A stretch of DNA of 64,000 nucleotides, from the NCBI RefSeq assembly GCF_006345805.1, contig NC_043018.1, forward strand, positions 5,580,001-5,644,000. Reading direction: 5' to 3'. Both the position numbers and the translations under genes were made by a program. Under the pieces are notes generated by a model. That model was given only the letters and a program-made list of their open reading frames with translations, ran no database searches and was not told where the DNA came from. This document shows, piece by piece, positions 968 through 48,678 of the stretch (positions are counted from its first letter, which is position 1; each line of letters starts with the position of its first letter). This stretch comes from Octopus sinensis. Taxonomy: Eukaryota.

Positions 968-4346
<3,379 letters not shown>

Positions 4347-8679: not shown

Positions 8680-8737
<58 letters not shown>

Positions 8738-8902
8738 TACGACGGGCTTCTTTCAGTTTACGTCTACCAAATCCACTCACAAGGCTTTGGTCGGCCCAGG
8801 CTACAGTAGAAGACACTTGCCCAAGGTGCCACGCAGTGGGACTGAACCCAAATGAAGGAATTTTTTGTATACAGTGATCAGGTGCACTACAACTAAAAAA
8901 AA

Positions 8903-11136: not shown

Positions 11137-12354
11137 TCAGAAATGAATTTCATTAAAAACATAACAGACTTTCTTGATGGCATCATCTATGTCTTCTTCG
11201 TTTATATTACAGCAAATTGCAAACCGAATATCTTTACCTATAAGTTTGCAACCCACATGGATTTCCTTACCCAGTTCCTTCACTTCAGCTTCTGTGGTCT
11301 GTTTAAAAAAAAAAAAAACACAGAAATGAAGTAAATGAATAAAAAAACGAAAAAACAAAGAAGTATTCTATAAAATAAAACTTGCCAGAAATTTATATTA
11401 TAAGAACTTAGAAAACGTGTGAGATATGAAGATAGCAGATAAATCGATCAACAATTTTTTCTACTATAAGCACTTGGTCTGAAATTTTGAGAGAAGGGAC
11501 GTGTTGATTATATCGATTCCAGTCCCCAACTAGTACGTATTTTATCAACCCCTAAACAATGAACGGTAAACTTGATCTCGGCAGCATTTGAACTCGGAAC
11601 GTAAAGAGCCAAGAGAAATGTCCCCAAGCACTTTGTCCAGAATGCTAACGATTCTGCCAGCTTGCTACTGTGCTAAAGTTGTAAATAATAGCATGTAGAA
11701 TATTCAGTTAAAAAAACAAACTCTTGGATGGAAAAAAAAAGTTAGGCTCCCTCCTATATACGAATCCATACCTTCTGTCCAGAAAATATATTTATTTACA
11801 GGTTTACTATTAATTTCCGCTCATAGTTACCCCTCTTTACAAATATTTATATTTAAACCAGTAGCTTTACTTTCTGCAGAATGAAATGGATAAATAAATT
11901 AGGGATTCGCTTTCATACCGTCATTAAACGTTCTGTTAAGTTAGTGATGAAAGACATTTCTTTATCGATTTTAATAAAAACGAGATTAGTTTGGTCTTCC
12001 TCTGGTTCTATTGTCACCAATGAAGAAGAAAGATTTTTCAGACCTGAAACCAACAAAAATGAGAAACAATTCACGAATTAAAAACTTAAATAAAAAGATA
12101 ATTCTTAATTAAATAATTGAAATAATAAGAATAATTCACGAAATATATTAACTTATTAGCATGCAAATTACTCTATCAAATGTACTGCTTAATTATTCAC
12201 ATTTTTTAATTAATCAGGCGTTATCTCATAGCTTTGGGAGAAAAAAAAATGAAAGAAGACACATACACACAAATGTTACGTGAGCGTCAATATTCTAAAA
12301 ATAAGAGTTTAAAATTTAATTTCATAAATATTTATACAAGTGTGTGTGCTTGTG

Positions 12355-12637: not shown

Positions 12638-15600
12638 TAAGAGGGAGAGAGAGGTTGAGCGAACAAGAGAGAGATTGTTAAGATAAATATAATTTACGAT
12701 AAAATTTTAGTTTCACTTTCATCAAAATATCGACGAATTCAGAGTAAAACATCTCCTTACACTTCACCTCATTCAGTATCACTGATTGTAATTCACTCCC
12801 GCTCCCTTTGTTGCTTTAGCTTCCCTCCGCCAGTGTGACCATGTGAAGCATATTGCATTTTATTTTATGCAAGATAAGATTAGTTAAGAATTAAGAAAGC
12901 AGAATGAACTTTCAAAAGAAAATGACAAGCACAACAAAGTAGAGACGCTGCTACAAGAACGAAGTAGAAACGCTGTTGGATAATTTAGAAAGCTTCAAAA
13001 CGTTTCATTTGAGTATTATCTTTATATATAAAAGTGAGGTTGTGTGCTGTCTGTCACCTACGATTTAGATTCCTAACTACTCCCACATTTTGCGGTGCAG
13101 TTTAACCAAAAGCGGGTATCTTATAGTCGTGATTCATATCGAGCCCTTCTGGGTATTAGCGCGCATCTACGATGATCTCTACGATTAAAAAAAAAATTAC
13201 CATAAATTTTTCCCATTTTTAATGCTTTTTGGCATATATAAGGGAAGTAACTCTCTAAAATTTATTATTAAATCTCAGAACGTAAAAAGCTACAGTAACC
13301 CCCCCCCTTTGTGGTTAGCCATATTGAGATGGTATTATACTTTACATCTCTAAAAATGCTTATATAGTTATTTCCCTTACAAACCCGAGCAACGCCGGGC
13401 GATACTGCTAGTTAGATAAATACAAAAAATAAACAGAAGGACTCCAGCTCCTGTCGAGTGATTTAGAAAGTAAATCGTATAAAGTGGAACTAATTTATAG
13501 ATGGTTATGTTGTTATGTCATCTAATGTGACTCCGCTGAGAAGGCTGTGATGTTATTGTGGTAGGAACCCGGTAAAGAAATACATGGAGCAAAGGTGATA
13601 ACTTTAAATACGTTTATTGTGGTCACACGTATAGATAGATACACAAGCTGAATGGAAGTGGTTGATGGACTTTTGTTCATATATCTACATGCATCTGCGT
13701 GGGTTGTATGTTAGCTGTTAACCCTGGTGAGAAGCTCACGAACAGCGATATGTTAGAACCAGTGCAGTGTGTTGGTGCTGTGTAGATGCTTTTGACGACG
13801 TTGGTGAGAAACATCAGTGGTGGCGACGAAGATAGCGGTCGCTGCAATGTGGTCAGTGGGTAAACCTTAGAATGTCTGGAACCAACTGACGTCGAGCCTA
13901 GGAAGGGGCGAGCTTTTGTAGCTGATAGTAGGCTCAAATGCCTGTTTGAAGCAGACTATCTCACATGACTTATTTGAAGGCTGCGATTGGTTGGGTTGGA
14001 TATTGGGGCGTGATAGTGTAAGAGACAAATTGCGTCAATACCCACCAATCGGAGTGGGAGACACAACGGGGGTCCAAAACAGCGACCGAAGGTTAGCTGT
14101 TACCTGCTACGTTCGTATGTATGTAATAGAAGAGAGGAAGCTCACTAGAGTTCGCTATAAATTCAACTGCTTCAAACGCTGTTACTCACACACACAAAAA
14201 AAAGGTTATATACAAAGACATGTAGCATATTATATATATATATATATGTATACAAAATAAATATAAGAGAGTGGTCACTATATGGCTCACTCTAGCACCA
14301 GTTAATCCAAAAGGTTTCAACCACGAAAATACATGTTTCCCATGAAAGTCAGTACGATTGTTAGCTCACACGGACAGGGCAAATAAAAAATAACAAAAAT
14401 ACAGATTATTTTGGGACAATTGTTTCGCTATTAATGAATTAAATGTAATTTTACTTACAAAAAAAATCCATTGTAGCTCGTCAGCCAAACTATCTGGATG
14501 AAATCCACTCAATCACAGCCAGATTTTACCATAACGATAAATACGCGTGTGGTTCAATTGATTACATCCGACGTTATAATCAAATGCCCCAACTAACAGC
14601 GCGCCAAACTTTCACGGAAAAAAATACAGCATTTAGAAATAATGCAGCATAATTATAATTAATTAATAAGGGTGAGAGAATTAGATACTAATTTAATAGT
14701 ATATCTATTCAACACCAAGTGCCTAGTGCTCCGAGAAACCTGGATTATTATAATATTTTATAACATATTATAATATTTATACAAAATAAATATAAGAGAG
14801 TGGTCACTATATGGCTCACTCTAGCACCAGTTAATCCAAAAGGTTTCAACCACGAAAATACATGTTTCCCATGAAAGTCAGTACGATTGTTAGCTCACAC
14901 GGACAGGGCAAATAAAAAATAACAAAAATACAGATTATTTTGGGACAATTGTTTCGCTATTAATGAATTAAATGTAATTTTACTTACAAAAAAAATCCAT
15001 TTGTAGCTCGTCAGCCAAACTATCTGGATGAAATCCACTCAATCACACGCCAGATTTTACCATAACGATAAATACGCGTGTGGTTCAATTGATTACATCC
15101 GACGTTATAATTCAAATGCCCCAACTAACAGCGCGCCAAACTTTCACGGAAAACAAATACAGCATTTAGAATAAATGCAGCATAATTATAATTAATTAAT
15201 AAGGGTGAGAGAATTAGATACTAATTTAATAGTATATCTATTCAACACCAAGTGGCCTAGTGCTCCGAGAAACTGGATTATTATAAGTGACCACTCTCTT
15301 ATATTTATTTTGTATAAATATTATAATATGTTATAAAATATTATAATAATCCAGGTTTCTCGGAGCACTAGGCCACTTGGTGTTGAATAGATATACTATT
15401 AAATTAGTATCTAATTCTCTCACCCTTATTAATTAATTATAATTATGCTGCATTTATTTCTAAATGCTGTATTTGTTTTCCGTGAAAGTTTGGCGCGCTG
15501 TTAGTTGGGGCATTTGAATTATAACGTCGGATGTAATCAATTGAACCACACGCGTATTATCGTTATGGTAAAATCTGGCGTGTGTGATTGAGTGGATTTC

Positions 15601-18600
15601 ATCCAGATAGTTTTGGCTGACGAGCTACAAATGGATTTTTTTTGTAAGTAAAATTACATTTAATTCATTAATAGCGAAACAATTGTCCCAAAATAATCTG
15701 TATTTTTGTTTTTTTTATTTGCCCTGCCGTGTGTGAGCTAACAATCGTACTGACTTTCATGGGAAACATGTATTTTCGTGGTTGAAACCTTTTGGATAAT
15801 GGTGCTAGAGTGAGCCATATAGTGACCACTCTCTTATATTTATTTTGTATAAATATTATAATATGTTATAAAATATTATAATAATCCAGGTTTCCGGAGC
15901 ACTAGGCCACTTGGTGTTGAATAGATATACTATTAAATTAGTATCTAATTCTCTCACCCTTATTAATTAATTATAATTATGCTGCATTTATTTCTAAATG
16001 CTGTATTTGTTTTCCGTGAAAGTTTGGCGCGCTGTTAGTTGGGGCATTTGAATTATAACGTGGATGTAATCAATTGAACCACACGCGTATTTATCGTTAT
16101 GGTAAAATCTGGCGTGTGATTGAGTGGATTTCATCCAGATAGTTTTGGCTGACGAGCTACAAATGGATTTTTTTTGTAAGTAAAATTACATTTAATTCAT
16201 TAATAGCGAAACAATTGTCCCAAAATAATCTGTATTTTTGTTATTTTTTATTTGCCCTGTCCGTGTGAGCTAACAATCGTACTGACTTTCATGGGAAACA
16301 TGTATTTTCGTGGTTGAAACCTTTTGGATTAACTGGTGCTAGAGTGAGCCATATAGTGACCACTCTCTTATATTATTTGTATAAATATATAATATGTTAT
16401 AAAATATTATAATAATCCAGGTTTCTCGGAGCACTAGGCCACTTGGTGTTGAATAGATATACTATTAAATTAGTATCTAATTCTCTCACCCTTATTAATT
16501 AATTATAATTATGCTGCATTTATTTCTAAATGCTGTATTTGTTTTCCGTGAAAGTTTGGCGCGCTGTTAGTTGGGGCATTTGAATTATAACGTCGGATGT
16601 AATCAATTGAACCACACGCGTATTTATCGTTATGGTAAAATCTGGCGTGTGATTGAGTGGATTTCATCCAGATAGTTTTGGCTGACGAGCTACAAATGGA
16701 TTTTTTTTGTAAGTAAAATTACATTTAATTCATTAATAGCGAAACAATTGTCCCAAAATAATCTGTATTTTTGTTATTTTTTATTTACCCTGTCCGTGTG
16801 AGCTAACAATCGTACTGACTTTCATGGGAAACATGTATTTTCGTGGTTGAAACCTTTTGGATTAACTGGTGCTAGAGTGAGCCATATAGTGACCACTCTC
16901 TTATATTTATTTTGTATAAATATTATAATATGTTATAAAATATTATAATAATCCAGGTTTCTCGGAGCACTAGGCCACTTGGTGTTGAATAGATATACTA
17001 TTAAATTAGTATCTAATTCTCTCACCCTTATTAATTAATTATATATATGTATATATACTGATTTTAAACTTTGGTACTAGGCCAGCAATTTCGGAGAAGA
17101 CAATAAGTCGATTACGTCGACACCAGTGTGTGGCTCCTACCCCCAAGAATAAAGAAGCAAATGTCAAGGAAATATATTTACCGTTGACCAGTTTTTTTGT
17201 TAGAAAATGGTCCTTCCGAATGTTTTCTTCAGCTCCGTCTAAACCATATAAAGCTGCTGCAGCTTCCATACCCAGTTGAGGCATTTCACCCCCGAGGGCT
17301 TTACGACATCGTCTGACTCTGGTTATTAAAAAAAAAATAATAATTATATTAATATCTTGATATATGTGTTAAGATGTTCTCGGAGATCACTCGTAAAGCG
17401 AAAACCCGTAAAATGCAGTTGGGAAGCAAGCTTCTTTCTACACAGCCACAGCCTAGTGGTTAGGGTGTTATATTTAAAAACATGCTACAAGCTGGTCGTT
17501 TAGCTTAATGGTAGAGTATTCGGTTGGAATCTGAGGCGTACGGGTTCGAGTCCCGCAGACGTCTACTGACAGCTTTTTTTTTTTAACCAACGGTGGTGCC
17601 CCAGCATGACTACAGCTTTAAAGCTGAAACACTTAAATAACAATACCAATTGATACAAACCTTTTGATGAAAGATTCAGTGCCAGCTACTATGGACCCAA
17701 ATGGAGCACCAATTCCCTGGAATTAAAATTCAAAGAAAATCCTTTTAAAAAGATCTTAGAGATATAGAAGTAAATAATTAACAGAAGTAAATAATTAATA
17801 GACGTAAATAATTAATAGAAGTAAATTATTAATAGAGGTAAATAATTAATGTAATGAATATTTTTGTTAATTTAGAAATGAATTTATGAAAAGAGAGATG
17901 CTGTGTTGGGGGTGTCAAAGAATACACCCGACATTTCCTCTGCGTGTCATAAAGGGCGACTGAAAGAGGTCGAGGTAGGGCTTGCACTCCGATCTGGTGA
18001 AACCCTTACCAACAACGGCTACCCAAACAAACCCGTTGATTTGAGGGTTGTCCCCCCGAGCGGTGCAAGGGCGGGCAGCGTCCGCCAGGAATAGGGAATC
18101 AACAACAAATGGTGGATGCAGCGAGGCGCTGTCATAGGGCATGCCCCCTTATTACTACTACTACTACTACTTGTCTTCCAACTTCAATTGGTGACAATTT
18201 GAACTTCCAGAACACCACAGCGTGTTTTTTTTTTAATAACCTCAGTGTTATTTTGTACTAAAATCTATTGACAAGGTTCTTCCATACCATTGTGAAATAG
18301 GTTCTCCTGTAAGAGTCCAGTCCTTGGACATTCACCAAAGACATAGAGGCAAGGTTTGATGGCATTTACACCTTCATGTTAGGGGCAATTCCGAATATCG
18401 CGTCGAAAAAAGCAGCATCTCATGAAACAAAGACCGTATGGCAGTCTTCTTGCAATCAAGTTTATTATTCGAGAGAGACTCATACGATTTGCAGGACATT
18501 GCTGGAGGGTTAAACAACAACTGATTAGTGACACACTAATCCTTGTTGATCTCGCGAATGCTATGATGGGTGGCATAATAAAATCAAATAAATCCGAGAA

Positions 18601-18895
18601 ATATTGACCAGATGATACTCATTTGTTAATATGACATGGTATAGTGGTTATCACGTCTGCTTCACACGCAGAAGATCGTGTGTTCGAAACTCGCTGGAAC
18701 CCTGCCTTGCCTTGCTTTGTTTTATAGGCGTAGGAGTGTCTGTGTGGTAAGTAGCTTGCTTTCGAACCACATGGTTCCGGGTTCAGTCCCACTGCGTGGC
18801 ACCTTGGGCAAGTGTCTTCTACTATAGCCTCGGGTCGACCAAAGCTTTGTGAGTGGATTTTGTAGACAGAAACTGAAAGAAGCCTGTTGTATATA

Positions 18896-18926
<31 letters not shown>

Positions 18927-21900
18927 CTGTGTCTGTGTATTTCCCCCCCAAACATCCCTTGAAACCGATGCTGGTATGTTTACGTCCCCGTCACTTAGCG
19001 GTTCGGCAAAAGCCTCGGGCCGACCAAAGCCTTGTGAGTGAATTTTGTAGATAGAAACTGAAAGAAGCCTGTTGTATATATGTATATGTGTGTGTGTGTG
19101 TGTGTGCGTGCGTGCGTGTCTGTGTGTGTGTATGTGTGTGTGTGTGTGTGTGTGGTGTTTGTGTATGTCCCTCCAAACATCGCTTGAAACCGATGCTGGT
19201 GTGTTTACGTCCCCGCCACTTAGCGGTTCGGCAAAAGACACCAATAGAATAAGTACTAGGCTTACAAAGAATAAGTCTTGGGGTTGATTTGCTCGATTAA
19301 AGGCGGTGCTCCAGCATAGCCACAGCCAAATGACTGAAACAAGTAAAAGAGTAAAAAGAGTAGAGAATGTCAGACTATGAACTGAAAGATCTTGGTAGTG
19401 AACACAAAAACCCAACACACTGGCCGGCGCAGGACACGAAACCACAACGGAAAGATCATAGTTGCAACACCTTAATACATTTCCTAATTAACTATACACA
19501 TTAACCCCGCTACTATGCGTGTGGCCTTGTAGTTAGGCTGTTGCATTCACAATCACTAAATCGTGGGTTCGATTCCCAGACGGGGCGGCGCGTTGTGTTT
19601 TTGAGCAAAATATTTAATTTCATGTTGTTCCAGACCACTTCGATCAATGGTAAATGCTCTCCTAGCCAGTGCAATGACGTCATTTGAAGACTAAAACAAT
19701 ACAAAATTGTATTGTAATCAGTGATGTGTAACAACGTCTGACAGATTAGTCGGTCATGTGATCACATGGTCACGTGATTAAGCTCAACACAAGGTTGAGT
19801 CCTTGTTGCAGTATAGTACCTTGTATGTCTCAAAGTCCAAGACTTTGAGTCACTTTTCCCAGAGGTAAAAAAAGGGTTGGCAGAGGGCTAAAACCCCTAC
19901 ACAGGAAAAAGTCAATGAAGCAATGATACCAATACAAAATCAACAAGATCTGGGAGAGTATGGCCCTCGGGGAAGCGTACGAGAGTAACTCTCACACTGG
20001 GGTATGCGTCTGCCCAGAGAACAGTGGAGAAAAGCCATTGACGGCCAATGCGAAGTAAGAGACCTTTAACCATAATATCATAAAAAATACCCCTTACCTT
20101 ATTAAGACAAAAAGTGACAGAATCACAGAATTTTGTTATCTCTGAAACAGGAACACCAAGTCCAACGGCTGCATTCAAAATACGTGCGCCATCCACGTGA
20201 ACCTTTATATCATTTTCTTGGGCTAGATTGTACAACTGCAAAAATAAAAAATATTATTTAATCAGTAACAATGTGTTACACGGTTTTTGTCCTTGGGCAG
20301 CAACTATTATTTTCTATTTGCTTGCCTCTAGAAATTATGACCTTGCTTTCAAACTTTCAGAAATTATTCCAGGTTGTTCCAGCGGTACAACCTGGAATTG
20401 TATTGTCTTGTATTGTCTTGTATTGTCTTGTATTGTCTTGCTGCTGTGGAGGCGCGTGGCTTAGTGGTTAGGGTGTCAGCATCATGATCGCAAGATTGTG
20501 GCTTCGATTCTTGGACCGGGCGACGCGTTGTGTTCTTGGGCAAAACACTTCAATTTCACGTTGCTCCAGTCCACTCAGCTGGCAAAAATGAGTAACGCTG
20601 CAATGGACTGGCGGCCCATCCAGCTTCGGAACACACACACCATGGAAACCAGGAAACCGGGCCCATGAGCCTGGTTCGGCTTTAAAAGGGCGCATTTATT
20701 TATTTATTTATTGTCTTGCTGCAGAAGAGCCTGCTTTCTGTTAACCAATGCCGTGCATTTATGCCGCACAATGGCACACATCCGTAAGATGCCGAACTCA
20801 CCTCATACTCTCTGAGTGCTACTCGCCAGATTTGCCTCGATGGCTTAGGACACGACCTCAGAATCCACGGTTACCTGATCATCAAACTACTTGACCTCCT
20901 ACGGTCAGGTGATATACACGTCGCACACTTGCACGTGTGAAAATATTTGTTTCAAATGGTGGCACATGGCCAGAAAATACAGATGAGGGGTTAGGTCGAT
21001 TACATCGACCCCTGTGTTTCACTGGAACTTATTTTATCGACCACGAAAAGATAAAAGGCAATGTCGAACTCGGTAGAATTTGAACCCGGAATATAAAGTC
21101 GGACGAAATAACGCTATGCATTTTTCCTGGTGTGCTAACGATCTTACTAGTTGGCTGTCCTCACGTATGCAAATATTGCAAAGCTTTTGAGTCGCCTCAA
21201 TATTACATCACTTCATTATGCATTGATAATCATACCAAATCATTATGCGTTGATATCAAATAAATTTTCTTTACTACCCACAAGGGGCTAAACATAGAGG
21301 GGACAAACAAGGACAGACAAAGGGATTAAGTCGATTACATCGACCCCAGTGCGAAACTGGTACTTTATTTATCGACCCCGAAAGGATGAAAGGTAAAGTC
21401 AACCTCGGCGGAATTTGAACTCAGAACGTAACGACAGACGAAATACCTATTTCTTTATTACCCACAAGGGGCTAAATACAGAGGGGACAAACAAGGACAG
21501 ACACACGGATTAAGTCGATTACATCGACCCCAGTGCGTAATTGGTACTTATTTAATCGACCCCGAAAGGATGAAAGGCAAAGTCGACCACGGCGGAATTT
21601 GAACTCAGAACGTAGCGGCAGACGAAATACGGCTACGCATTTCGCCCGGCGCGCTAACAATTCTGCTATATCACTGCCTTCTATTGATATCCAATAAATC
21701 ACTCCAACAGGCCCCGATATTCAATGGTCATACTCCGATCTTATGATACCAGTTGCCACAATGTTTCAATATCGAGTGAACCAATCACAGTACCTTGACA
21801 GGCACAGGTGTGGTTCCGTGGTTAAAACGTTTCAGGTTCAGTCCCGCTGCGCAACATCTTGGAACAGTATCTACTATATCTCAGGGCTGACAAAATCTTT

Positions 21901-23482: not shown

Positions 23483-24648
23483 TTGCTAGGGGAGATAATT
23501 GTTCACTCATTCATTTTGCAGTAAAGGGGAGGTAAATCTGTAATTTAAATTATTTTTGTTTTTTGTGTTCTCTATTTTATTATGGCTTACATCTTGCATT
23601 AGATGGGGTAAATCCTTTATCTTTAGTATGGGTTCATTTATGTAACTAGATGCTCAAGGAAATTCGATCCGCAAGAGATGTATGGTCCATAGACAACAAA
23701 TTTCCTCCCCACGATATCGCCAAATATATCTCACTCAACACATTGACGAATATGCAGGACGATTACATCCACAAATCGTAATTTTCAACTTGCTCTCTGG
23801 ACCTCAACACAAGTAAGACTGAATAAAGAAGTCTCATCTATCTAAAAATATAAACCAGAATTAAATAAAGGACGTACTCCATCTAATATAAGATATCAAT
23901 CATAATAAAATAGAGAATACAAAAACAAAAACAAACATAAATATTACAGATTTACCTCCCCTTTACTGCAAATTGAATGAGTGAACAATTATCTCCCCTA
24001 GCAATGCGAAACCAGTCCTTACTTCAATTACGTTGAAAGAACAAAACCTAGTTTTGTACAAAATTGTATATATCTAATATCATGGCTGTGATATAATCTT
24101 AAATCCTGTAAAACATACCTTCTGTGATTTTTCTATATATATCCACCACGTATCTTTCCCCAGTAAAATATTTTCTACCTTATACATGATGGCCGTCCAC
24201 TCGTGACCGAGGAAGACCATTGCCGACCTTCAGGAACATTGTGCGCTCTAGGACTAACTTATATTTTGCATTTGCGGCTCCGTTGGTGGCTAATTAGCCC
24301 TGCTCTTGACAAGCATACACAACTGCAAACATTGCAGACCAAGCTTTCCCCATTCACTATACGAGCCGTGCGCTTTCGCACAGCTCGCCTAAGTTCTTCA
24401 TGCTGGATACGCGCTCTCTCAAAAATGTCGATCCCCTCCTTAACCTGCTTCCTCCATCTGTGGTGATGACAGGCATTGTTCTCCCAGTCAGTGTCCTGCA
24501 TATCAAAGGCCTTTAACGAGGACTTGACACAGTCCTTAAATCGCAGCCTTGGTTTTCGCCGGAGTCTCCTTCCATTCACAAGTTCTTCATAGAGCATCTG
24601 CTTAGGAATCTTTCTACCTTATACATACATACATACATACATACACAC

Positions 24649-26477: not shown

Positions 26478-27170
26478 CACGATTGCAATATCTTGAGTTT
26501 TAGAAATAAAAATAAAATATATAAAATGTTAAAACATTATAAAAAGACAATAAAGATGGCAAGAAACATTTTAACTCTTTAGCATTGAGATTACTCTGTC
26601 AAATGTAATGATTATTTATTCACATTGTTTTGAATTAGTTGTGCATTATCTTGTGGCTTTGAGATTTCGATGATATGTGAATGTGATACTGATGAGAGAG
26701 CAATAACTTTTGAAATATATATGTTAGGTGCAAGCATAGCTGTGTGGTAGGAAGTTTGCTTCCCAAGCGCATGGCTTCGGCTCAGTCCCATCGCATGTCA
26801 CCTCAGGCAAGTGTCCTCCTCTGTAGCTCTGTAGCCACAGGCTGACCAAAGCCTTGTGAGTGGATTTGGTTTTCGGAAACTGAAAGAAGCCCGTCGTATG
26901 TGTGAGAGTGCACGCGCGCGTTTGTTTGCGTGTGTATGTTTCTGTGTGCGTGTGTGTCTTTGTGTCTGTGTTTGCTGCCGACTTGACAACCGGAGTTGGT
27001 TTGTTTACGTCCCCAAAACTTAACGGTTCGGCAAAAGAGACTGATAGAATAAGTAACAGGCTTAAAAAAGTAAGTATTGGGTTAAAAAAAAGTTCTTCAA
27101 GGCGGTGCCCCAGCATGGCCGTATTCTAATGACTGATACAAGTAAAAGATAAAAGATTAAAGACTCATGA

Positions 27171-27202
<32 letters not shown>

Positions 27203-27710
27203 CTGTAGCACACACACACACACACACACATGTAATACATGAAGTGGACGCCAAATTAAGCAGTGACTTTATCAGATATATTGCATCATTCAAGGAATCG
27301 TTATCTTGGTGATTCCTTTACCATTATGGGCTAAACCTGACAAAGCATTGTACAAATTTTCTAAGATTTTCACAAATCTGTATACAGCTATTAAGTTCAC
27401 AAGAGAGGCAAATACGCACGGATTAGCATTTCTGGATATCTTAATAATTACAAAACCATTGAAATGTGTTGGAGGTGGGGACACAAATACAGATACACAA
27501 ACATACACACATACACACATATATATTCATACGACGGGCTTCTTTCAGTTTCCGTTTACCAAATCCACTCACAAGGCTTCGGTCGGCCCGAGGCTATAGA
27601 AGACACTTGCCCAAGGTGCCACGGACTGAACCCAGAACCATGTGTTGGTAAGCAAGCTACTTACCACACAGCCACTTCTACGCCTATACATATATATTAT
27701 ATATATATAA

Positions 27711-28873: not shown

Positions 28874-29278
28874 AGGCGTAGAAGTGGATGTGTGGTAAGT
28901 AGCTTGCTTACAAACCACATGGTTTCGGGTTCAGTCCCACTGCGTGGCACCTTGGGCAAGTGTCTTCTACTATAGCCTCGGGCCGACCAAAGCCTTGTGA
29001 GTGGATTTGGTAGACGGAAACTGAAAGAAGCTCGTCGTATATATGCATATATATATATATGTGCGTGTTTGTGTGTCTGTGTTTGTCCCCCCAACATCGC
29101 TAGACAACCGATGCTGGTGTGTTTACGTCCCCGTAACTTAGCGGTTCGGCAAAAGAGACCGATAGAATAAGTACTAGGCTTGCAAAGAATAAGTCCTGGG
29201 GTCGATTTGCTCGACAAAAGGCGGTGCTCCAGCATGGCCACAATCAAATGACTGAAACAAGTAAAAGAGTAAAAGAGG
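28874..29278 (+). mobile_element. SINE family A, full-length copy
   Basis: Near-consensus copy of the 1395-1790 family. Confidence 0.85.
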
Positions 29279-29540: not shown

Positions 29541-30840
29541 ATGATTGATTGATTGATTGATTGATTCCAGTTTCAGCTTATGAGCTGTGGCCATGCTGGG
29601 CACCGCCATTTGGTGTTGCTACTTGGTTTCACTTCATGGAGGCTTTCTAGCAACTGCTATTTGGTGCATGAGAGAGTTCGATGCAGCTGCCCTCATCTGC
29701 CCCTCCTGTCGTGAAGTTGGTTCATCTGGGACACCTGACAGGAAGAGATCCAGCTCCATTTTAAGACATCTGTATCCACCCCATGCAGGTCTCTCAGGTT
29801 CATCGGGAGGATATTGAAGAGCTGTGGGCCTCGGAAGCCAGGCTATCACAGAATCTTGTCCTACATCTTGATGGCAAGTTTGGAGTCCTAGGCACCACGC
29901 AGTGGCGCCCAGTTCTGGCGTTTGCGTAACTCTCGATGCCAAAGTTCAGGACACTTCCCTCCAGGATCTTCCAGATGTATATTATGGCATATCTTTCCCG
30001 CCTACGCTCCAGGGAATATAATTTTAATCTCTTGAGTCTTTCCCAGTAGCTTACATTCTGCATAGAGGCTATCTTCTTCGTGTAGCTTCGTTGGATCGCC
30101 TCAAGTTCTGTGATCAACTTGACACTGGATGGTGACCATAGCTGAGAGCATAGTCAAAGTGACTTAGGACAAGTGTCTTCCAGAGGACCATCATGGTTTC
30201 TTGTTCTCTGTTCTAAAGGTTCTAAGAATCCATCCAGCCAGCCGTCTGCATTTCATTGTCAGTTTAGCAACATGTACATGAAAGGTCGCGTCATCACTCA
30301 TGTGAATACCAGGTCACGCACTGATTGTGCTCTGGATTGCATCCCTCCGGGTCCAGTGTATTCCTTGGGTATGCATTCAGTTTTGCATGCTGATAGTATA
30401 AAGCTTGAAACTTTTCAGCATTGAACTGCATGCTATTCTTTTCAGCCCACTTGTATATTTCGTCCAGCTCATATTGCAGGTGCCTAGTGTCTTCAGGGTT
30501 CTGTATTGCCTGTGAAACTTTTGTATCATCTGCATAACTTGTGATCGTGGCTCTCCGCGTGGCTGAGGGCATGTCTGAGAGGGCCATTATGAACAGTAGT
30601 GGTCCCAAAACAGTGCCCTGTGGAACACCGCTCACTATTTGCGTGCTAATGGCTACTACCACCTGACTTCTATTCTTCAGAAAGTCGTGAAGCCATTCTC
30701 CTAGTTTTCCAACTATGCCAAGATCACGCAGTTTGTGACATATCATTCCATGATCGACTTTATCGAAGGCCTTTGCGAAGTCGAGATATATGACTTCCAC
30801 ATTTGAGTGGTTGAGCAGTTGTTTCAGCACCCAGTCATAT
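29541..30840 (-). mobile_element. 5'-truncated CR1/L2-group LINE (reverse transcriptase, frameshifted)
   Basis: DFAKAFDKVDHG, SGVPQGTVLGPLLF, YADDTK and LYSLERRRERY motifs, with an (AATC)n tail. Confidence 0.9.
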
Positions 30841-31681: not shown

Positions 31682-32323
31682 TGATATATAAACAACACTT
31701 TACTGTCCCTGGTAAACAAATCGCATTCATTCATAGACTGCATGACCTGACCTATATTTGTGTTTCTTTTATTAAAGGCAACGTTAAAGAATTACTACAC
31801 AAAATATTCTGAACGGAAGCATGATATTTGAGAAAATTTTAAACAAACATTACGCTTTAATCTGTTGTGTCTGGGGAGAGTTATTTTCTTTTCGTGCCTT
31901 TATAATTTAACACGCTTACCGATAAGATTCCCACGTTTTTCTTATTTTTATTTTCTTAAAATTTTCGTTGCGTCTTGCAACCTTTCCAAAGACGCAACGA
32001 AAATTTTAGGAAAATAAAAATAAGAAATAAGTGAAAATTTTAACGGTGAGTGTGTTAAATTATAAGGCACAACAGAATATGTTTCAACACACGAACTCAC
32101 ATAAAGAATCTTGCAAACCAAATCCTAAAACGAAATTACGCTTTAATTTCTGTTACAATTATTTAAGGTTTAAAAAAAAGCCGGCTTCCCAACCACATGG
32201 TTCCTGGTTCAATCCCACTGCGTGGTACCTTGGCTAAGTGTGTTGTATTATAGCCTCGAGACGACCAAAGCCTTGTGAGTGGATTTAGTAGACGGAAACT
32301 GAAAGGAGCACGTAGTATATATG

Positions 32324-32359
<36 letters not shown>

Positions 32360-33145
32360 GTGTCCTACTACCGCTTGACAACCGGTGTTGGTGTATTTGT
32401 GTCCTGTAACTTGACGGTTCGGCAAAAGAGGCCGATAAACTAAGTACCAGGTTTAAAAAACTAAGTACTGGGGTTGATTAATTCGACTAAAAATTTCACG
32501 GGGGTGCCCCTGCATGACCACAGTCTATTGACTGAAACAAGTAAAGAAATAACAGATCATATCATTGCTGTTATGTTAAACTGCCGCATGTCCAAAGTCG
32601 GTTTTTTTTTTCAATATTTATTTTTGCTTGTAGTAGGCGGTCATTTTTCTTAAACTATCGTATCTCCAGCTGCTTCAGATGCCAAGATATCAAAAATTGT
32701 CAAAGTGTAGTACATTGGCTTTGCTATGGAATGGTGAAACTATTTTTTCGTTACTTCAGTCTACTGGAGTAATAAAGGTAGAATGAGGTATTTTTACCTC
32801 TTGGCTGAAACAGCTGTAAGATATTTTCCCAATTTCTATTCCTGTATGTTATATATTTTAATAATTACTGGTATCTTTATATATTTTATATGTAAAGCAT
32901 AATATGTTATATATGTATGCATATTCTTGTAATTGTCATTTTAGTAAATAAATATATAAATTGGCATAATATAATGTCTAAAAGTTGATGAACCACCTAT
33001 TGATCCCTCCATTGCTCTATAAATTAATCGTAAAATAACTCTTTTAATTTTTACTTTTCTATTATATGTAATTTTCTAGATGGTGTAATTTAATTATTCA
33101 TTTTGAATTGATAAAAGGTGGTTTTTTCTAATATGTTATATTTAT

Positions 33146-36984: not shown

Positions 36985-38023
36985 TGTCACATTCTCACCC
37001 TCCTCACAGGCACCCATCATCGACCCTATCGCATCATCAACTCCTTCACCTGCACCTCCAGCAATATTATCTATTGCTCTCTCTCTGCCATTCCCTGTAC
37101 ATCGGACAAACGGGACGCCGCTTGGCTGACCGGTTCGCGGAACACCTTCGTGACATCCGCCTTGCGAACGACTCACCGGTCTCACGCCATTTCCGCTCCA
37201 CCGGTCACTCCTTGCAACACCTGTCTGTGTTCGGTTTGTCCTTACACAGAGGCCATCCGGATTCCCGTTTGCGCCGTGAACAGGAATTAATCTTCTTGGT
37301 CTCAACTCTCCCCCCTCCTCATCTAACCTCCCCCCGACCCCTACTTCTCTTCAGTCCTTCATCCTTTCACCCCTACTCCTCTTCCCTTCTTCCCTCTTTC
37401 TCCCTCCCTCTTTCTCCCTCCCTCTTTCTTCCCTCTTCCCCTTCTCTCTCTCCCCCTCTCCCTCTTTCCTCCCTCCTCCTCTCCCCTTCCCTCCTCTCCT
37501 TCATTCTCCCCTCCTCTTCTCCTCTCCTTCCTCCTTCCCCTTCCCCCTCCTACTCTCCCCTTTCCTTCTCCCTTCTTCTCCCCTTTCTTTCTCCCCCCTC
37601 CCCCTCCCCCATCTTCTCTTCTCTCTACACTACACCATACGACTTTACACATCACATCATATATACATACACACGTCCAGACCTCTCATACGCACTAATA
37701 CTCTCTCATACACACACACACACTCTTCTCATACACACACTCTTATGTTGGAGTTAGGTCATTCAACCCTATTATCTCCCCTTATTTCGCTCTTGCGTCT
37801 CATGTTTGATCTTTGACTTCTGGCCGAAATCAGATCGCCATGTTGATTCGCTAGCTTCTGCACGCAAAAAAAATTTTTTTCTCTCCTTCTTTCTGTGTTG
37901 AAGAGCGTAGGCTCGAAACGTTAAAGACTTGTTTTATTTATATTTCCTGAGCGCTATACTAATACAATTGTTTGTTTGTTTTCCACCAGCCTTCGTCTTT
38001 TGTCTATTTTCATAAAGCTTCCC

Positions 38024-42659: not shown

Positions 42660-44686
42660 GTTTACTTGCTTCCAAGAAGAATTATAGTTTATTTACTTCT
42701 AAGGAAATATTATAGTTTGCTTCCTTCCAAAAAGAATTGTAGTTTACTTGCTTCCAAGAAGAATAATAGTTTACTTGCTTCTAAGGAAAAGAATATATTA
42801 CTTGGTTGTAAGAATTATAGTTTACTTGCTTCCAAGAAGAATTATAGTTTACTTGCTTCTAAGAAAAAGTATATATTACGTGGTTGTAAGAAGAATTATA
42901 GTCACTTCCTTTGAAGAAGAATTATAGTTTACTTGCTTCTAAGAAGAATAATAGGTAACTTGCTTGAAAGAAGAATTAGAGTTTAATTGCTTCTAAGAAG
43001 AACTGTAGTTTACTTGCATCCAAGTAGGATTATAAATTACTTGCTTCAAAGAATTATAGTTTACATGCCATAGTTTAATTGCTTATAAGAAGAATTGTAT
43101 TTTACTTGCTTCAAAGAAGAATAATAGTTTACTTGCTTCTAAGAAGAATTATATATTACTTGGGTGTAAGAATTATAGTTTACTTGCTTCCAAGAAGAAT
43201 TATGGTTTAATTGCTTCTAAGAAGAATTGTAGTTTACTTGCTTTAAAGACGAATAATAGTTTACTTGCTTTAAAGAAGAATCATATATTACTTGGTTGTA
43301 AGAAGGGTTATAGCTTTAAGAAGAATAATATGTGACTTGCTTAAAAGAAGAATTAGAGTTTACTTGCTTGAAAGAAAAGTTATAGTTTATTTGCTTCCAA
43401 GAAGAATTATAGTGTACTTGCTTCATAGAAAAATTGTAATCTATAATAATTATTAGAAGCAAGTGAACTATAATTCTTGTTGGAAGCATGTAAACTATAA
43501 TTATTCTTAAAAGCAAGTAATATATCATTCTTTTAGAAGCAAGTAAACTATAATTCTTCTTTTAAGCAAGTCAACTAGAATTCTTTTTTGAAGCAAGAAA
43601 ACTAGAATTCTTCTTAGAAGCAAGTAAACTATAGTTATTCTTAAAAGCATGTGAACTGTAATTCTAGTTGGAAGCAAATAATTCTTATTGTAGGCAAGTA
43701 AACTATAATTCTTCCCAGAAGCAAGAAAACTAGAATTCTTCTTACAACCAAGTAATATATAATTCTTTTTGAAGCAAGTAAACTATAATTCTTCTTACCA
43801 GCAAGTAAACTATAATTATTCTTAGAAGCAAGTAATCTCTAATTCTTCTTGGAAGCAAGTAAACAATAATTTTTCTTCGAAGCAAGTAAACTAGAATTCT
43901 TCTTTCAAGCAAGTAAACTAGAATTCTACTAGGAAGCAAGTAAACTATATAGTTTACTTGCTTGAAATTGTAGTTTACTTGCTTCTAAGAAGAATTATAG
44001 TTTTCTTGCTTCCAAAAAGAATTAGAGTTGTACATGCTTGAAAGAAGAATTATAGTTTAGTTGCTTCTTCGAAGAATTATAGTTTAATTAGAAGAATTAT
44101 ACTGCACTTGCTTCCAAGAAGAATTTTATTTTAATTGCTTCCATCAAGAATTATAGTCTACTTGCTTCCAAGAATAATTATAGTATACTTGCTTCCAAGA
44201 TGAATTATAGTTCACCTGCTACTAAGAAGACATATATTACTTGCTTCTAAGAAGAATTCTAGTTTTCTTACTTCTGTGAAGTTTTTTTGCTTCTAAGTAA
44301 AATTCTATCTTTCTTGCTTCTGGGAAACTTGCTTCTGGGAAAGCTATAATTTTTCTTTGAAGCTAATATACTATAATTCTTCTTGGAAACAAGTAAGCTA
44401 TAATTCTTCTTTCACATAAGTAATCTATAATTCTTCTCAGAAGCAAGAAAACTAGAATAACTATAGTTATTCTTAAAAGCATGTGAACTATAATTCTTCT
44501 CAGAAGTACACTATAATTCTTCTTAGAAGCAAGTAAACTATTATTCTTCTTAAAGCAAGTAAACTATAACTCTTCTTTCAAGCAAGTAAGCTATATATCT
44601 ACTTTCAAGCAAGTAAACTATAATTATTCTTTGTAAGTGAAGTATAAATCTTCTTGGAAGCAAGTAAACTATAATTTTTCTTTGCA
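42660..44686. repeat. ~27-29-bp minisatellite array with internal orientation switches
   Basis: Unit ~TATAGTTTACTTGCTTCTAAGAAGAAT. Forward ~42660-43420, reverse ~43440-43945, forward ~43950-44340, reverse ~44345-44686. Confidence 0.9.
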
Positions 44687-44786
44687 NNNNNNNNNNNNNN
44701 NNNNNNNNNNNNNNNNNNNNNNNNNNNNNNNNNNNNNNNNNNNNNNNNNNNNNNNNNNNNNNNNNNNNNNNNNNNNNNNNNNNNNN
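44687..44786. other. Assembly gap (100 N)
   Basis: Run of N. Confidence 1.
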
Positions 44787-46067
44787 ATGGATGAGATCCA
44801 TGTCATTTGTGAAGCATAGATCCAGTGTGTTACCTGCCCTGGTTGGTTGGAGTATGACCTGCTCCATGTACAGGGTGTTGATGAGGTTCAGGAGGGACCT
44901 CGCCTGTCCTCGTTCACATCTTGTCATTCCTGGGAGAGAAAGGCCCTCGGGCCATCTGACATTGGGCAGATTGAGTCTCCCATAAGAAGCACACCTATGT
45001 GTTGTTCTAATGTGGTTAGAATTTCTTCTATTTTTATAGGCAGTCTTCAAACTTGCCCACATGGCTTGGGGCATCTGGAGGGCGATATGTAGCACACCAA
45101 CTACATCAAGTTGCCTAATATGTACAATTAGTGTGTCACACCGATTTGAGTATGACAAGAGGACCTGGGGTGTGAGGTCCTCACGGATGTACATAGCAAC
45201 ACCTCCATGACTCCTTTCTTCCTGTCGGTCCGTAGTACAGCATACTGTGGTATGTGTAACTCCGCATCTGCTATGTCCGGTTTCAGGTGCGTTTCTGTAA
45301 GTGCTATGCATAAGGCTTGATTGCATGCACAAGTCTCTCAGGAACGGGATCTTTGTCCTGTTACTGAGTGTTTGCAGTCCTCTGATGTTCAGTAGGTGTA
45401 TCGAGGTGAGGTGTACGTTGTTGCCAGCGGTGTCCATCCTGTGTCTGTTTGCTGTGGTGGTCTGGTATTAGTGGGTAGTCCCACCTGCGGGCTTGGGTTT
45501 GATGAAGCCAGGTCAGCTGCTGTACAATCTTTTGTGCCATGCACAAAAAAGATTGTTGCTCAGCAGCTGCTCTTTCGACAACATCATGTTAGCTGTTTGT
45601 GGCGCGCACAACATCTGCGTACCTCCGCTTTGGGGCAGGTGGTGCGTGGTCCATCCCTTTTCTTTGTGTTGATGGTTTGTCCATCTGCCTCGTGTCTCTG
45701 TGGCAGGGTCACGATGTGCAAAGCGGCAGCCTGCCACCTTCCTTTCCATGCCAGCAGGAACCTCTCAGGTAGAACATACACACCCGTGTGCGCTGTTTGG
45801 TTCCATCCTTTGCGGTTCCACTTCTATTCCTGGTTGTTTCACTCTTTGGTCCTGCTTGAGCTTTTTCTTTTCTTTAGCTCTTCCAGTCCTTCTTTTAGTT
45901 CTTCTTCTCCCTCTACCTCTTCACCGGGTTCTCCGTCTCCATGGCATTGCACCTGGGTTCACTTCCCGGGCAGGTTTCTCATTCAAACCTCCTCCCGGGC
46001 GTCCACCAGGTGTGGGTGACTTCTTCATCGTCCCTCCATTCTTGCCATCTTTGCCCCGCTCGTTCGC
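44787..46067 (-). mobile_element. LINE 5' part (APE endonuclease, decayed), cut by the assembly gap
   Basis: LNIRGL, GGVAMYIR, LNLPNVRW and QPTRAGNTLDLCFTN motifs. Confidence 0.85.
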
Positions 46068-46107
46068 ATATATATATATATATATATATATATTATGCAT
46101 ATATATA

Positions 46108-46159
<52 letters not shown>

Positions 46160-46540
46160 TATATATATGCATATATAATATTATATATATATGCATATAT
46201 ATGCATATATATTATATATATATATATATGCATATATATATGCATATATATATATATATATGCATATATTATGCATATAATATATGCATATATATATATA
46301 TGCATATATATATATATATATGCATATATATATATATATATATATATATGCATATATATTATATATATGCATATATATATATATATATGCATATATATAT
46401 ATATATTGCATATATATATATATATATATATATGCATATATATTATATATATATGCATATATATATATATATTGCATATATTATATATATATATATATAT
46501 TATATATATATGCAATATATTATATATATATATATATATA

Positions 46541-46574
<34 letters not shown>

Positions 46575-46709
46575 TATATATAGATATATATATATATGCA
46601 TATATATATATATTATATATATATGCATATATATTATATATATTATATAGCATATATATATATAATATATATATTATGCATATATTATATATATATTATA
46701 TATATATGC

Positions 46710-46741
<32 letters not shown>

Positions 46742-46783
46742 ATATATGCATTATATATATATATATATATATTATATATATGC

Positions 46784-46814
<31 letters not shown>

Positions 46815-46947
46815 GCATATATATATATATATATATGCATATATATATATATATATAGCATATATATATAGATATGCATATATATATATATATATATGCA
46901 TATATATATATATTGCATATATATATATATGCATATTATATATATGC

Positions 46948-46980
<33 letters not shown>

Positions 46981-47947: not shown

Positions 47948-47978
<31 letters not shown>

Positions 47979-48002
47979 CATATATCATATATATATATAT
48001 AT

Positions 48003-48033
<31 letters not shown>

Positions 48034-48059
48034 TACAATATATATATATATATATATAC

Positions 48060-48117
<58 letters not shown>

Positions 48118-48150
48118 ATAATATATATATATACATAATATATATATATA

Positions 48151-48211
<61 letters not shown>

Positions 48212-48620: not shown

Positions 48621-48678
<58 letters not shown>

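What the first reader, a model, noticed from the sequence alone, without database searches (positions are those of the whole stretch)
14251..17040. Intronic array of ~533-nt units each carrying a canonical hammerhead ribozyme: candidate octopus retrozyme / circRNA-producing element
Seen in the sequence: every complete unit contains TTTTGG-CTGACGA-GCTA[44 nt]TAGC-GAAA-CAATTG-TC-CCAAAA. This gives all conserved core nucleotides, a 6-bp stem I, a G-C-closed stem II (extendable by AATGGATT/AATTCATT), a GUC cleavage triplet and a tiny stem III that is the palindrome ACAATTGT. There are five copies (+: 15611, 16143, 16676; -: 14409, 14938), with cleavage sites spaced 532, 533 and 529 nt. There is no ORF and both ends abut (TA)n. 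Established: minimal type I hammerheads with palindromic stem III occur in Penelope-like element pLTRs and cleave as dimers, and tandem non-coding metazoan retrozymes self-cleave to monomers that circularise. Inference: a transcript across the array would be cut into ~533-nt monomers, possibly circular RNAs mobilised in trans by a Penelope RT. I cannot tell from here whether this family has been described.
Basis: partly seen in the sequence, partly recalled or inferred. Interest (0 to 1): 0.92.

Follow-up and report, generated by a model that had tools for sequence, protein, structure and literature searches.

The report
Hammerhead-ribozyme tandem repeat in cephalopod intron
A 2.8-kb block of about five near-identical 530-base non-coding repeats, each carrying an intact self-cutting hammerhead RNA motif, sits in an intron of a cephalopod gene; it looks like a new family of a known kind of mobile element (an animal "retrozyme"), so it is a good catch but not a new kind of thing.

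Summary
Five hammerhead motifs sit at the stated places, with cleavage sites 532, 533 and 529 nt apart. The units have no ORF, 32% GC, and (TA)n at both ends. A canonical GT-AG intron of a threonine-aldolase-like gene contains the array. One correction: both minus-strand copies have UUUGG, not UUUUGG, in helix I, and one of them also lacks an A in helix II.

Rfam's type I hammerhead model matches full-length at 30.1 bits, below its 34-bit gathering score. It appears only when the 121-nt stretch is searched alone; a 40-nt insertion in loop 2 costs the score. A match this good is expected by chance in about 0.15% of simulated windows. The monomer is predicted to be highly self-paired (z = -7.8).

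The array is a head-to-head structure: about 2.0 inverted units joined to about 3.3 direct units. Its outer ends lie in AT-rich parts of the unit, not at the cleavage site. This is the footprint reported for Penelope-like element (PLE) integration.

Best reading: a non-autonomous non-LTR retrozyme insertion. Cleavage, circles, copy number and the PLE partner are untested, and no relatives were reachable. Novelty: new member of a known kind. Interest is modest.

The parts
14249..15286 (-). Inverted arm: about 1.96 units of the ~530-nt repeat. In its own orientation it runs from unit position ~188 through two hammerheads to unit position ~165.
   Evidence: blastn of the unit against the window; boundary alignment; arm-to-arm alignment at 97.6-98.3% identity
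15287..17043 (+). Direct arm: about 3.29 units, from unit position ~136 through three hammerheads to unit position ~291.
15604..15700 (+). Hammerhead copy 1 (core 15617-15687). Predicted cleavage is after C15687.
16136..16232 (+). Hammerhead copy 2 (core 16149-16219). Predicted cleavage is after C16219. Rfam RF00163 matches 16143-16225 at 30.1 bits.
16669..16765 (+). Hammerhead copy 3 (core 16682-16752). Predicted cleavage is after C16752.
14402..14496 (-). Hammerhead copy 4 (core 14415-14484), sense to the host gene. It has UUUGG in helix I and lacks one A in the helix II internal loop. Cleavage falls between 14415 and 14414.
14931..15026 (-). Hammerhead copy 5 (core 14944-15014), sense to the host gene. 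It has UUUGG in helix I. Cleavage falls between 14944 and 14943.
15287..15340 (.). Asymmetric head-to-head junction. This is the 54-nt loop of the potential 1038-bp hairpin (14249-15286 pairs with 15341-16383).
   Evidence: sub-threshold hairpin-type Rfam hits here
14230..14248 (.). Left target flank, (TA)n ending in TATATG.
17044..17058 (.). Right target flank, TATATGTATATATAC. The TATATG repeats the end of the left flank and could be a 6-bp target-site duplication, but in (TA)n this cannot be resolved.
17182..17318 (-). Upstream host exon (threonine-aldolase-like, ..VRRCRKALGGEM..KKLVN-G), followed by a GT donor.
11920..12043 (-). Downstream host exon (GLKNLSSSLVTIEPEE..), preceded by tttcAG. 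The intron 17181-12044 (5.1 kb) contains the array.

Best explanation
The array is one insertion of a non-autonomous, non-coding retroelement of the metazoan 'non-LTR retrozyme' kind, in a cephalopod genome.

The element is a ~533-nt unit carrying one canonical type I hammerhead ribozyme. Its proposed life cycle runs as follows:
1. A longer-than-unit transcript of the unit's sense strand is cut after GUC at each hammerhead. Pairs of hammerheads probably share an 8-bp intermolecular helix III (ACAAUUGU).
2. The resulting ~533-nt monomers have 5'-OH and 2',3'-cyclic-phosphate ends, held side by side by the 12-bp helix I within a highly paired fold.
3. A tRNA-ligase-type enzyme (RtcB) closes them into circles.
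4. A Penelope-like element's reverse transcriptase and endonuclease copies circular or multimeric RNA into multi-unit cDNA at nicked (TA)n targets.

This particular locus bears the footprint of step 4. It lies in a (TA)n microsatellite. It has two arms head to head. The two outer (3') ends lie at different AT-rich 'TATA' positions inside the unit rather than at the cleavage site. Each arm runs uninterrupted through the cleavage/ligation site.

Shown here: the motif, the anatomy, the predicted folds and the intron position. Inferred: cleavage, circularisation, the reverse transcriptase partner, and whether this copy is expressed at all.

In host-gene pre-mRNA the two minus-arm hammerheads are in sense. 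However, they are transcribed after their full complement, so the 1-kb hairpin probably wins over ribozyme folding at this locus.
For: - Core and helices are present in 5 of 5 copies.
- The Rfam type I model aligns over its whole length, positions 1-45, at 30.1 bits and E = 4e-6 in the local search.
- A comparably good motif appeared in 3 of 2000 simulated windows.
- None of 45 core-pattern matches in prokaryotic, metagenomic and viral collections had a helix I longer than 3 bp.
- The hammerhead region folds with helices I and II as drawn, z = -3.4.
- Among core-free folds, the double hammerhead is 9.2 kcal/mol better than two single ones. The 2-bp helix III does not form on its own.
- The monomer MFE is -152.4 kcal/mol against -110.4 for shuffles (z = -7.8), with 67.5% of bases paired and the ends joined by helix I.
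- Units are 529-533 nt at 32% GC, with no ORF over 53 aa wholly inside the array.
- The anatomy is head-to-head, with (TA)n flanks and internal AT-rich end points.
- These traits match published descriptions. Non-LTR retrozymes are described in PMC7229834. Unit sizes of 51-972 bp and derivation from PLE terminal repeats are reported in bioRxiv 10.64898/2026.07.22.740005. PLE tandem/inverted insertions and microsatellite targets are described in PMC8557442. The canonical metazoan hammerhead geometry is described in PMC4209133.
Against: - Only one locus is visible, and no relative could be retrieved from any collection. Mobility, copy number and conservation are therefore unshown.
- The copies are nearly identical, so there is no covariation and no evidence of selection on the ribozyme.
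- Rfam stays below its gathering score, and the normal whole-window scans miss the motif.
- The unconstrained MFE pairs GACGA of the core with UUGUC, an inactive alternative fold.
- The 1-kb inverted repeat would sequester most of the hammerheads in any read-through transcript.
- No intact PLE lies in the window. There is only a degenerate GIY-YIG-like remnant.
Confidence: 0.68

Rival explanations
1. This is an inert relic: a local tandem (satellite-like) amplification of the terminal repeat of a decayed Penelope-like element. The hammerhead is merely inherited, and this family produces no transcripts, cleavage or circles today.
For: Only one locus is seen and there are no relatives. A degenerate PLE-like endonuclease remnant lies in the same window. 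The 2026 preprint derives retrozymes from PLE terminal repeats and allows expansion by unequal crossover. Near-identity of the copies fits DNA-level duplication as well as it fits rolling-circle reverse transcription.
Against: The hammerhead has the canonical architecture rather than the PLE-minimal one (judged against PMC4209133). All five cores are intact. The whole unit, not only the ribozyme, is far more self-paired than shuffles. The two arms have different AT-rich end points, which simple unequal crossover does not explain.
Confidence: 0.2
2. The functional output of this locus is a long intronic hairpin RNA (a 1038-bp stem), which would be a substrate for ADAR editing or small-RNA production. 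On this reading the ribozymes are irrelevant here.
For: The arms 14249-15286 and 15341-16383 are 97.6% complementary with a 54-nt loop. Rfam hairpin-type models hit the centre below threshold. The array lies in a transcribed-looking gene's intron. Massive A-to-I editing correlates with dsRNA abundance across Metazoa (title of PMC5625713; the link to cephalopods is from my own knowledge).
Against: Nothing shows that this is selected rather than a by-product of PLE-type insertion, which commonly produces inverted copies (PMC8557442). This reading does not conflict with the retrozyme origin.
Confidence: 0.07
3. The hammerhead is a chance motif in an ordinary AT-rich minisatellite, or the inverted part is an assembly artefact.
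For: Rfam scores below gathering. The five copies count as one event. The indel-only differences suggest a noisy long-read consensus. The window carries a scaffold gap.
Against: A motif this good appeared in 3 of 2000 simulated windows. The Infernal alignment is full-length. The junction is asymmetric by about 52 nt (unit position 188 against 136). A missed-adapter palindrome would be symmetric, which is an inference.
Confidence: 0.05

Closest known systems
Metazoan non-LTR retrozymes (coral, mussel and axolotl families; Cervera & de la Pena 2020, PMC7229834; Li, Clavereau & Pollet 2026 preprint)
   Same: One type I hammerhead per unit. Head-to-tail repeats of a few hundred bp. Low GC. No ORF, LTR, PBS or PPT reported for the class. 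A highly self-paired monomer. Helix III of 2 bp plus a palindromic tetraloop. Array size within the usual range of seven units or fewer.
   Different: The unit (529-533 nt) is longer than the 170-400 nt reported for invertebrates, though it lies inside the 51-972 bp range of the 2026 survey. Loop 2 is replaced by a ~40-nt extension of helix II, which pushes Rfam below threshold. The locus is a head-to-head inverted structure in an intron. No cephalopod family was found in the searchable literature. Expression and circles are not shown.
Penelope-like element pseudo-LTRs with minimal hammerheads (Cervera & de la Pena 2014, PMC4209133; Craig et al. 2021, PMC8557442)
   Same: A type I hammerhead in a terminal or tandem repeat. 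Tandem plus inverted 5'-truncated insertion architecture. Insertion into microsatellites, so that target duplications are hard to see.
   Different: There is no RT/GIY-YIG ORF between the repeats. The hammerhead is canonical: helix I is long, helix II is 4 bp up to a loop, helix III is present, and there is no extra base between positions 9 and 10.1. PLE minimal variants have helix II of 7-8 bp, helix I of 4-5 bp and no helix III.
Classical hammerhead satellites (newt satellite 2, Schistosoma Sm-alpha, cave-cricket pDo500), named from my own knowledge and from PMC7229834
   Same: Tandem non-coding repeats of about 330-500 bp with a type I hammerhead. A weak helix III, and cleavage as dimers in newts.
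   Different: There is no detectable sequence relationship. The promoters known for those satellites (snRNA-type or pol III) were not identified here.
Plant LTR retrozymes (PMC4918200)
   Same: Non-autonomous elements with hammerhead-delimited monomers that circularise, mobilised by an autonomous element's reverse transcriptase.
   Different: The plant elements have type III hammerheads inside LTRs, with a PBS and PPT, 4-bp TSDs, GC above 55%, and Gypsy-type helpers.

Membership tests
Hammerhead ribozyme, type I (Rfam RF00163) | Conserved core: C3 U4 G5 A6 N7 G8 A9, G12 A13 A14, the A15.1-U16.1 pair and H17 | tested here: met
   CUGACGA ... GAAA-C-AAUU-G-U-C is present in 5 of 5 copies and is aligned column by column by Infernal
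Hammerhead ribozyme, type I (Rfam RF00163) | Three helices around the core with helix I open-ended, and a G10.1-C11.1 closing pair | tested here: met
   Helix I is 7 bp + A.A + 5 bp. Helix II is GCUA/UAGC, then a 2x2 loop, then 8 bp, then a 5-bp distal hairpin. Helix III is 2 bp plus AAUU.
Hammerhead ribozyme, type I (Rfam RF00163) | Score at or above the curated gathering threshold (34 bits) | tested here: not met
   The score is 30.1 bits when 121 nt are searched alone. There is no hit at all in the 64-kb or 3.3-kb scans. The deficit comes from the 40-nt insertion in loop 2 and two deleted stem positions in the alignment.
Hammerhead ribozyme, type I (Rfam RF00163) | Helices supported by covariation among relatives | tested here: inconclusive
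   The copies differ almost only by 1-nt indels, and no relatives were found outside the window
Hammerhead ribozyme, type I (Rfam RF00163) | Site-specific Mg2+-dependent self-cleavage | not testable with these tools
   Needs in vitro transcription
Metazoan non-LTR retrozyme | Head-to-tail tandem units of a few hundred bp, each with one type I hammerhead | tested here: met
   Units of 532, 533 and 529 nt. There are 3.29 and 1.96 units in the two arms.
Metazoan non-LTR retrozyme | Low GC (<45-50%) and no coding capacity | tested here: met
   GC is 0.32. The longest ORF wholly inside the array is 53 aa. Translated unit ORFs have no homologue.
Metazoan non-LTR retrozyme | Monomer predicted to be stable and highly self-paired | tested here: met
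   -152.4 kcal/mol, z = -7.8, 67.5% of bases paired. The circular form is -149.2 kcal/mol.
Metazoan non-LTR retrozyme | Absence of LTR, PBS and PPT | not tested
   No LTR-like terminal structure is seen in the repeat maps. PBS and PPT motifs were not searched for specifically.
Metazoan non-LTR retrozyme | Many dispersed genomic copies (a mobile family) | not testable with these tools
   No eukaryotic genome collection is on hand. There is one locus only in the 64 kb.
Metazoan non-LTR retrozyme | Expressed as unit-length linear and circular RNA | not testable with these tools
   No transcriptome access
Metazoan non-LTR retrozyme | Co-occurrence with autonomous PLEs in the same genome | tested here: inconclusive
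   There is a degenerate GIY-YIG-like remnant at 37095-37310, with no Pfam hit. The literature reports Penelope families in Octopus vulgaris (PMC13282606), but the window's species is not established.
Autonomous Penelope-like element (the repeat as its pseudo-LTR) | RT plus GIY-YIG ORF between the terminal repeats | tested here: not met
   No ORF over 53 aa lies wholly inside the array. The units follow one another directly.
Autonomous Penelope-like element (the repeat as its pseudo-LTR) | Minimal hammerhead architecture: helix II 7-8 bp, helix I 4-5 bp, an extra base 5' of helix II, and helix III absent or vestigial (PMC4209133) | tested here: not met
   Canonical geometry instead
Autonomous Penelope-like element (the repeat as its pseudo-LTR) | Tandem plus inverted 5'-truncated insertion structure, and a microsatellite target | tested here: met
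   Head-to-head arms and (TA)n flanks. This is compared with the description in PMC8557442.
Plant LTR retrozyme | Type III hammerheads in LTRs, with PBS, PPT and 4-bp TSDs | tested here: not met
   The hammerhead is type I and there are no LTRs

The most novel reading that the evidence does not exclude
This is the first characterised retrozyme family of cephalopods. It would have an unusually large (~533 nt) monomer and a hammerhead whose loop 2 has been replaced by a long helix II extension, so that standard Rfam annotation misses it. On this reading the locus also preserves a direct footprint of how such elements integrate. Two cDNAs would be primed by microhomology at (TA)n on a circular or multimeric RNA, which explains end points inside the unit rather than at the cleavage site. 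They would then be joined head to head, as in Penelope-like elements. That would be structural evidence for the proposed but unproven PLE-mediated, rolling-circle mobilisation of animal retrozymes.
Probability: 0.35. Interest if true: 0.5.

Novelty: new member of a known kind. Interest (0 to 1): 0.34.

Why it matters
Animal retrozymes are a recently recognised class. Their mobilisation mechanism and their link to Penelope-like elements are still argued mainly from co-occurrence and sequence similarity.

A cephalopod family would extend the class to a lineage known for heavy RNA editing and a repeat-rich genome. The anatomy of this single insertion is the kind of evidence that, multiplied over many loci, could test the circular-template/PLE model. 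That anatomy comprises the (TA)n target, the head-to-head arms, and the end points away from the cleavage site.

There is also a practical point. The motif is missed by routine Rfam scans, so counts of hammerheads in cephalopod genomes (for example, 235 in the giant squid, PMC6962438) may be underestimates.

Sense-strand ribozymes and a 1-kb hairpin inside an intron could in principle affect the host threonine-aldolase-like gene. Nothing here shows that they do.

Tried and rejected
- Rfam at gathering threshold over the window, and at E<=10 over 14000-17300, gave no hammerhead. Only the 121-nt search found it.
- Core-pattern scans of metagenome, prokaryotic-genome and viral collections returned 45 loci. 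All are chance matches, with a helix I of 0-3 bp. No eukaryotic genome collection is available.
- Exact-product look-ups of two unit-encoded ORFs and one RT fragment found nothing on record.
- The last homology search used concatenated stop-free translations of the unit: 8000 word candidates, none significant.
- In the Argonauta hians threonine-aldolase locus (24 kb), the unit and the hammerhead are absent. The SINE and exons are shared. The genes are only 47% identical, so this cannot serve as an empty site.
- Pfam on the GIY-YIG-like remnant gave no hit even at E<=10. One unnamed Logan relative was found.
- A relaxed hammerhead descriptor over the whole window found no further credible motif. 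There was one weak hit at 26689-26721.
- I considered a pol III A/B-box promoter in the unit by eye. The box-like strings are in the wrong order, so I did not pursue it.
- I considered a missed-adapter palindrome artefact. It is disfavoured because the junction is asymmetric.

Full report
**What is there**

The region 14249-17043 is built from one non-coding unit of about 530 nt. A blastn of one unit against the whole window finds it only here. It covers 14227/14249-15286 in minus orientation and 15286-17043/17049 in plus orientation. The rest of the 64 kb gives only short AT-rich noise. The repeat finder gives start-to-start spacings of 529-536 nt and long inverted pairs between the two halves.

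The hammerhead pattern matches exactly five times, three on + and two on -. There were no matches in 100 shuffles. Predicted cleavage sites are 532 and 533 nt apart on + and 529 nt apart on -. The array has 32% GC, and no ORF longer than 53 aa lies wholly inside it.

Small corrections apply. Both minus-strand copies have UUUGG rather than UUUUGG in the 5' strand of helix I. One of them also lacks an A in helix II.

**Is the hammerhead real?**

All core positions are present: C3 U4 G5 A6 C7 G8 A9, G12 A13 A14, A15.1-U16.1 and C17. G10.1-C11.1 closes helix II.

RNAfold of the 121-nt region gives the following helices, at z = -3.4:
- Helix I: 7 bp, an A.A mismatch, then 5 more bp.
- Helix II: 4 bp, a 2x2 internal loop, 8 bp, and a distal 5-bp hairpin.

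Rfam did not report a hammerhead at gathering threshold over the window, nor at E<=10 over 3.3 kb. When only 16125-16245 was searched, Hammerhead_1 (RF00163) aligned over its whole length at 30.1 bits, against a gathering score of 34, with E = 4e-6 for that search. A 40-nt insertion in loop 2 accounts for the shortfall.

My own descriptor found the five copies and nothing else credible in the window. In 2000 first-order Markov simulations of the window, 66 had any loose match. Only 3 had helices as long as the real one. As an incidental control, 45 matches to the bare core pattern turned up in prokaryotic, metagenomic and viral collections. None had a helix I longer than 3 bp.

The five copies are one event, not five. 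They differ almost only by single-base indels, which looks like long-read consensus noise. No covariation evidence is therefore available.

**Which kind of hammerhead?**

Cervera and de la Pena describe canonical metazoan type I motifs (PMC4209133). These have helix I of about 6 bp, helix II of 4 bp, and helix III of 1-2 bp capped by a small palindromic loop. Such motifs are poorly active alone and active as dimers. They contrast these with the minimal variants of Penelope-like elements, which have helix II of 7-8 bp, helix I of 4-5 bp, an extra base before helix II, and no helix III.

The motif here has the canonical geometry. The one difference is that loop 2 is opened into a long extension of helix II.

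In constrained folds that keep the core free, the 2-bp helix III does not form on its own. The double hammerhead with an 8-bp ACAAUUGU duplex is 9.2 kcal/mol better than two single hammerheads. Cleavage as a dimer is therefore the likelier mode, as in newt and axolotl repeats (PMC7229834). The unconstrained MFE also contains an inactive alternative pairing, GACGA with UUGUC.

**The unit as a whole**

Cut at the predicted sites, the 533-nt monomer folds to -152.4 kcal/mol, against -110.4 +/- 5.4 for shuffles (z = -7.8). The complementary strand gives z = -5.2. In this fold 67.5% of bases are paired. Helix I brings the two ends together. The circular form is almost as stable, at -149.2 kcal/mol. 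This matches the 'highly self-paired' monomers described for retrozyme circles (PMC7229834).

**Anatomy of the locus**

The array is two arms joined head to head at 15286/15287.
- The minus arm is about 1.96 units. It starts at unit position ~188 and ends at ~165.
- The plus arm is about 3.29 units. It starts at unit position ~136 and ends at ~291.

The junction is therefore asymmetric by about 52 nt. Both outer ends stop at a 'TATA' inside AT-rich stretches of the unit and run into (TA)n. The flanks read ..TATATATATG | array | TATATGTATATATAC... TATATG on both sides could be a 6-bp target duplication. In this context that cannot be decided.

Neither outer end is at the ribozyme cleavage site, and each arm runs uninterrupted through the cleavage/ligation site. 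This is what one expects if cDNA synthesis was primed by microhomology on a circular or uncleaved multimeric RNA. That is an inference.

PLE insertions are described as tandem arrays, often with an adjacent inverted 5'-truncated copy. They also show a strong bias for microsatellites that obscures target duplications (PMC8557442). The anatomy here fits that description. It also fits the proposal that PLE machinery mobilises animal retrozymes (PMC7229834; bioRxiv 10.64898/2026.07.22.740005).

**Context**

The window is eukaryotic, with microsatellites, SINEs, RT fragments and a 100-N gap.

A threonine-aldolase-like gene (PF01212) lies on the minus strand. tblastn with the best named relative maps its exons. 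That relative is Argonauta hians 'probable low-specificity L-threonine aldolase 2', at 47% identity. The exon ending at 17182 is followed by GTAAAT. The next exon starts at 12043 after TTTCAG, and the reading frame is kept across the junction. The array therefore lies in a 5.1-kb GT-AG intron.

A SINE core present 13 times in the window is 84-93% identical to a copy in the Argonauta locus. This supports an octopod-related cephalopod. 'Octopus' itself was not verified.

In host-sense pre-mRNA the two minus-arm hammerheads are in sense. They are transcribed after their full complement, because the arms form a 1038-bp hairpin (14249-15286 with 15341-16383, 97.6% identity, 54-nt loop). That hairpin explains the sub-threshold miRNA-like Rfam hits at the centre, and it would compete with ribozyme folding. 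I therefore regard this locus as an insertion product rather than a demonstrated source of circles.

**Comparison with what is known**

The class is established. Non-LTR retrozymes occur in cnidarians, molluscs (mussel), arthropods, amphibians and others (PMC7229834). A 2026 survey finds units of 51-972 bp. In that survey, three quarters of families have at most seven repeats, and the elements derive from PLE terminal repeats (bioRxiv 10.64898/2026.07.22.740005).

For cephalopods I found only two relevant items. One is a count of 235 Rfam hammerhead-1 hits in the giant squid genome paper (PMC6962438). The other is reports of Penelope families in Octopus vulgaris (PMC13282606). Searches for hammerhead ribozyme or retrozyme together with octopus or cephalopod returned no description of such a family.

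This is a new member of a known kind. Three things are somewhat unusual: the unit length for an invertebrate, the extended helix II, and the clean head-to-head insertion footprint.

**Limits**

No eukaryotic genome or transcriptome could be searched. Attempts to reach relatives through ORF look-ups and a concatenated-ORF homology search failed. Copy number, mobility, expression, cleavage, circularisation and the identity of the helper element are all inferred.

**Verdict**

- Observation: confirmed.
Its activity claims are untested, and its interest score was too high.
- Confidence in the retrozyme-insertion reading: about 0.68.
- Interest: 0.34.

Noticed in passing
window 25035-11149 (-) and 4400-1 (-): There are two tandem threonine-aldolase-like (PF01212) paralogues on the minus strand. 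The second runs off the start of the window. The Argonauta hians locus L047 also has two tandem PF01212 genes.
   Followed up: partly
window 1410-1642, 8717-8852, 18753-18975, 27476-27658, 28901-29120, 32184-32394, 49371-49529, 60173-60384 and others: A SINE-like family has 13 copies in 64 kb. Its ~95-nt core is 84-93% identical to L047:11196-11292 of Argonauta hians, which is useful as a lineage marker.
   Followed up: partly
window 17494-17566 (+) and 18635-18696 (+): Two tRNA-like matches were found: Aragorn tRNA-Ser(GGA) with Rfam 34.2 bits, and a second at 31.6 bits. The second lies beside a SINE copy. They may be SINE heads or degenerate tRNA genes.
   Followed up: no
window 37095-37310 (+): A degenerate GIY-YIG-like stretch (..LYIGQTGRRLADRFAEH..) is followed by proline/serine-rich low complexity. 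It has no Pfam hit. Its only relative is an unnamed 136-aa Logan protein (P0027, 64% identity) with VIY...YIDQTG. It is probably a decayed Penelope-like endonuclease, and no hammerhead lies nearby.
   Followed up: partly
window 30294-30830 (-): A reverse-transcriptase fragment (RVT_1, E = 6e-19), presumably a LINE remnant. Other TE-like ORFs at 44550-45437, 49997-50317 and 24259-24597 had no Pfam hit.
   Followed up: no
window 44687-44786 and 46000-49000: A 100-N scaffold gap is followed by about 3 kb of almost pure TA/TATG-type low complexity (GC 0.11 in 46-48 kb).
   Followed up: no
window 17764-17850: A 17-nt tandem repeat (ATAGAAGTAAATAATTA) of 5.1 copies lies in the intron just upstream (in gene sense) of exon 17719-17660.
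   Followed up: no
window 14249-17043: Differences among the repeat copies are almost all single-base indels, often in homopolymers. This suggests long-read consensus error rather than divergence, so the copies cannot be dated from them.
   Followed up: partly
window 26689-26721 (+): A weak hammerhead-like string (CTGATGAGAGAGC..GAAA) was found only with the most relaxed descriptor. It has no convincing helix III and is probably chance.
   Followed up: no
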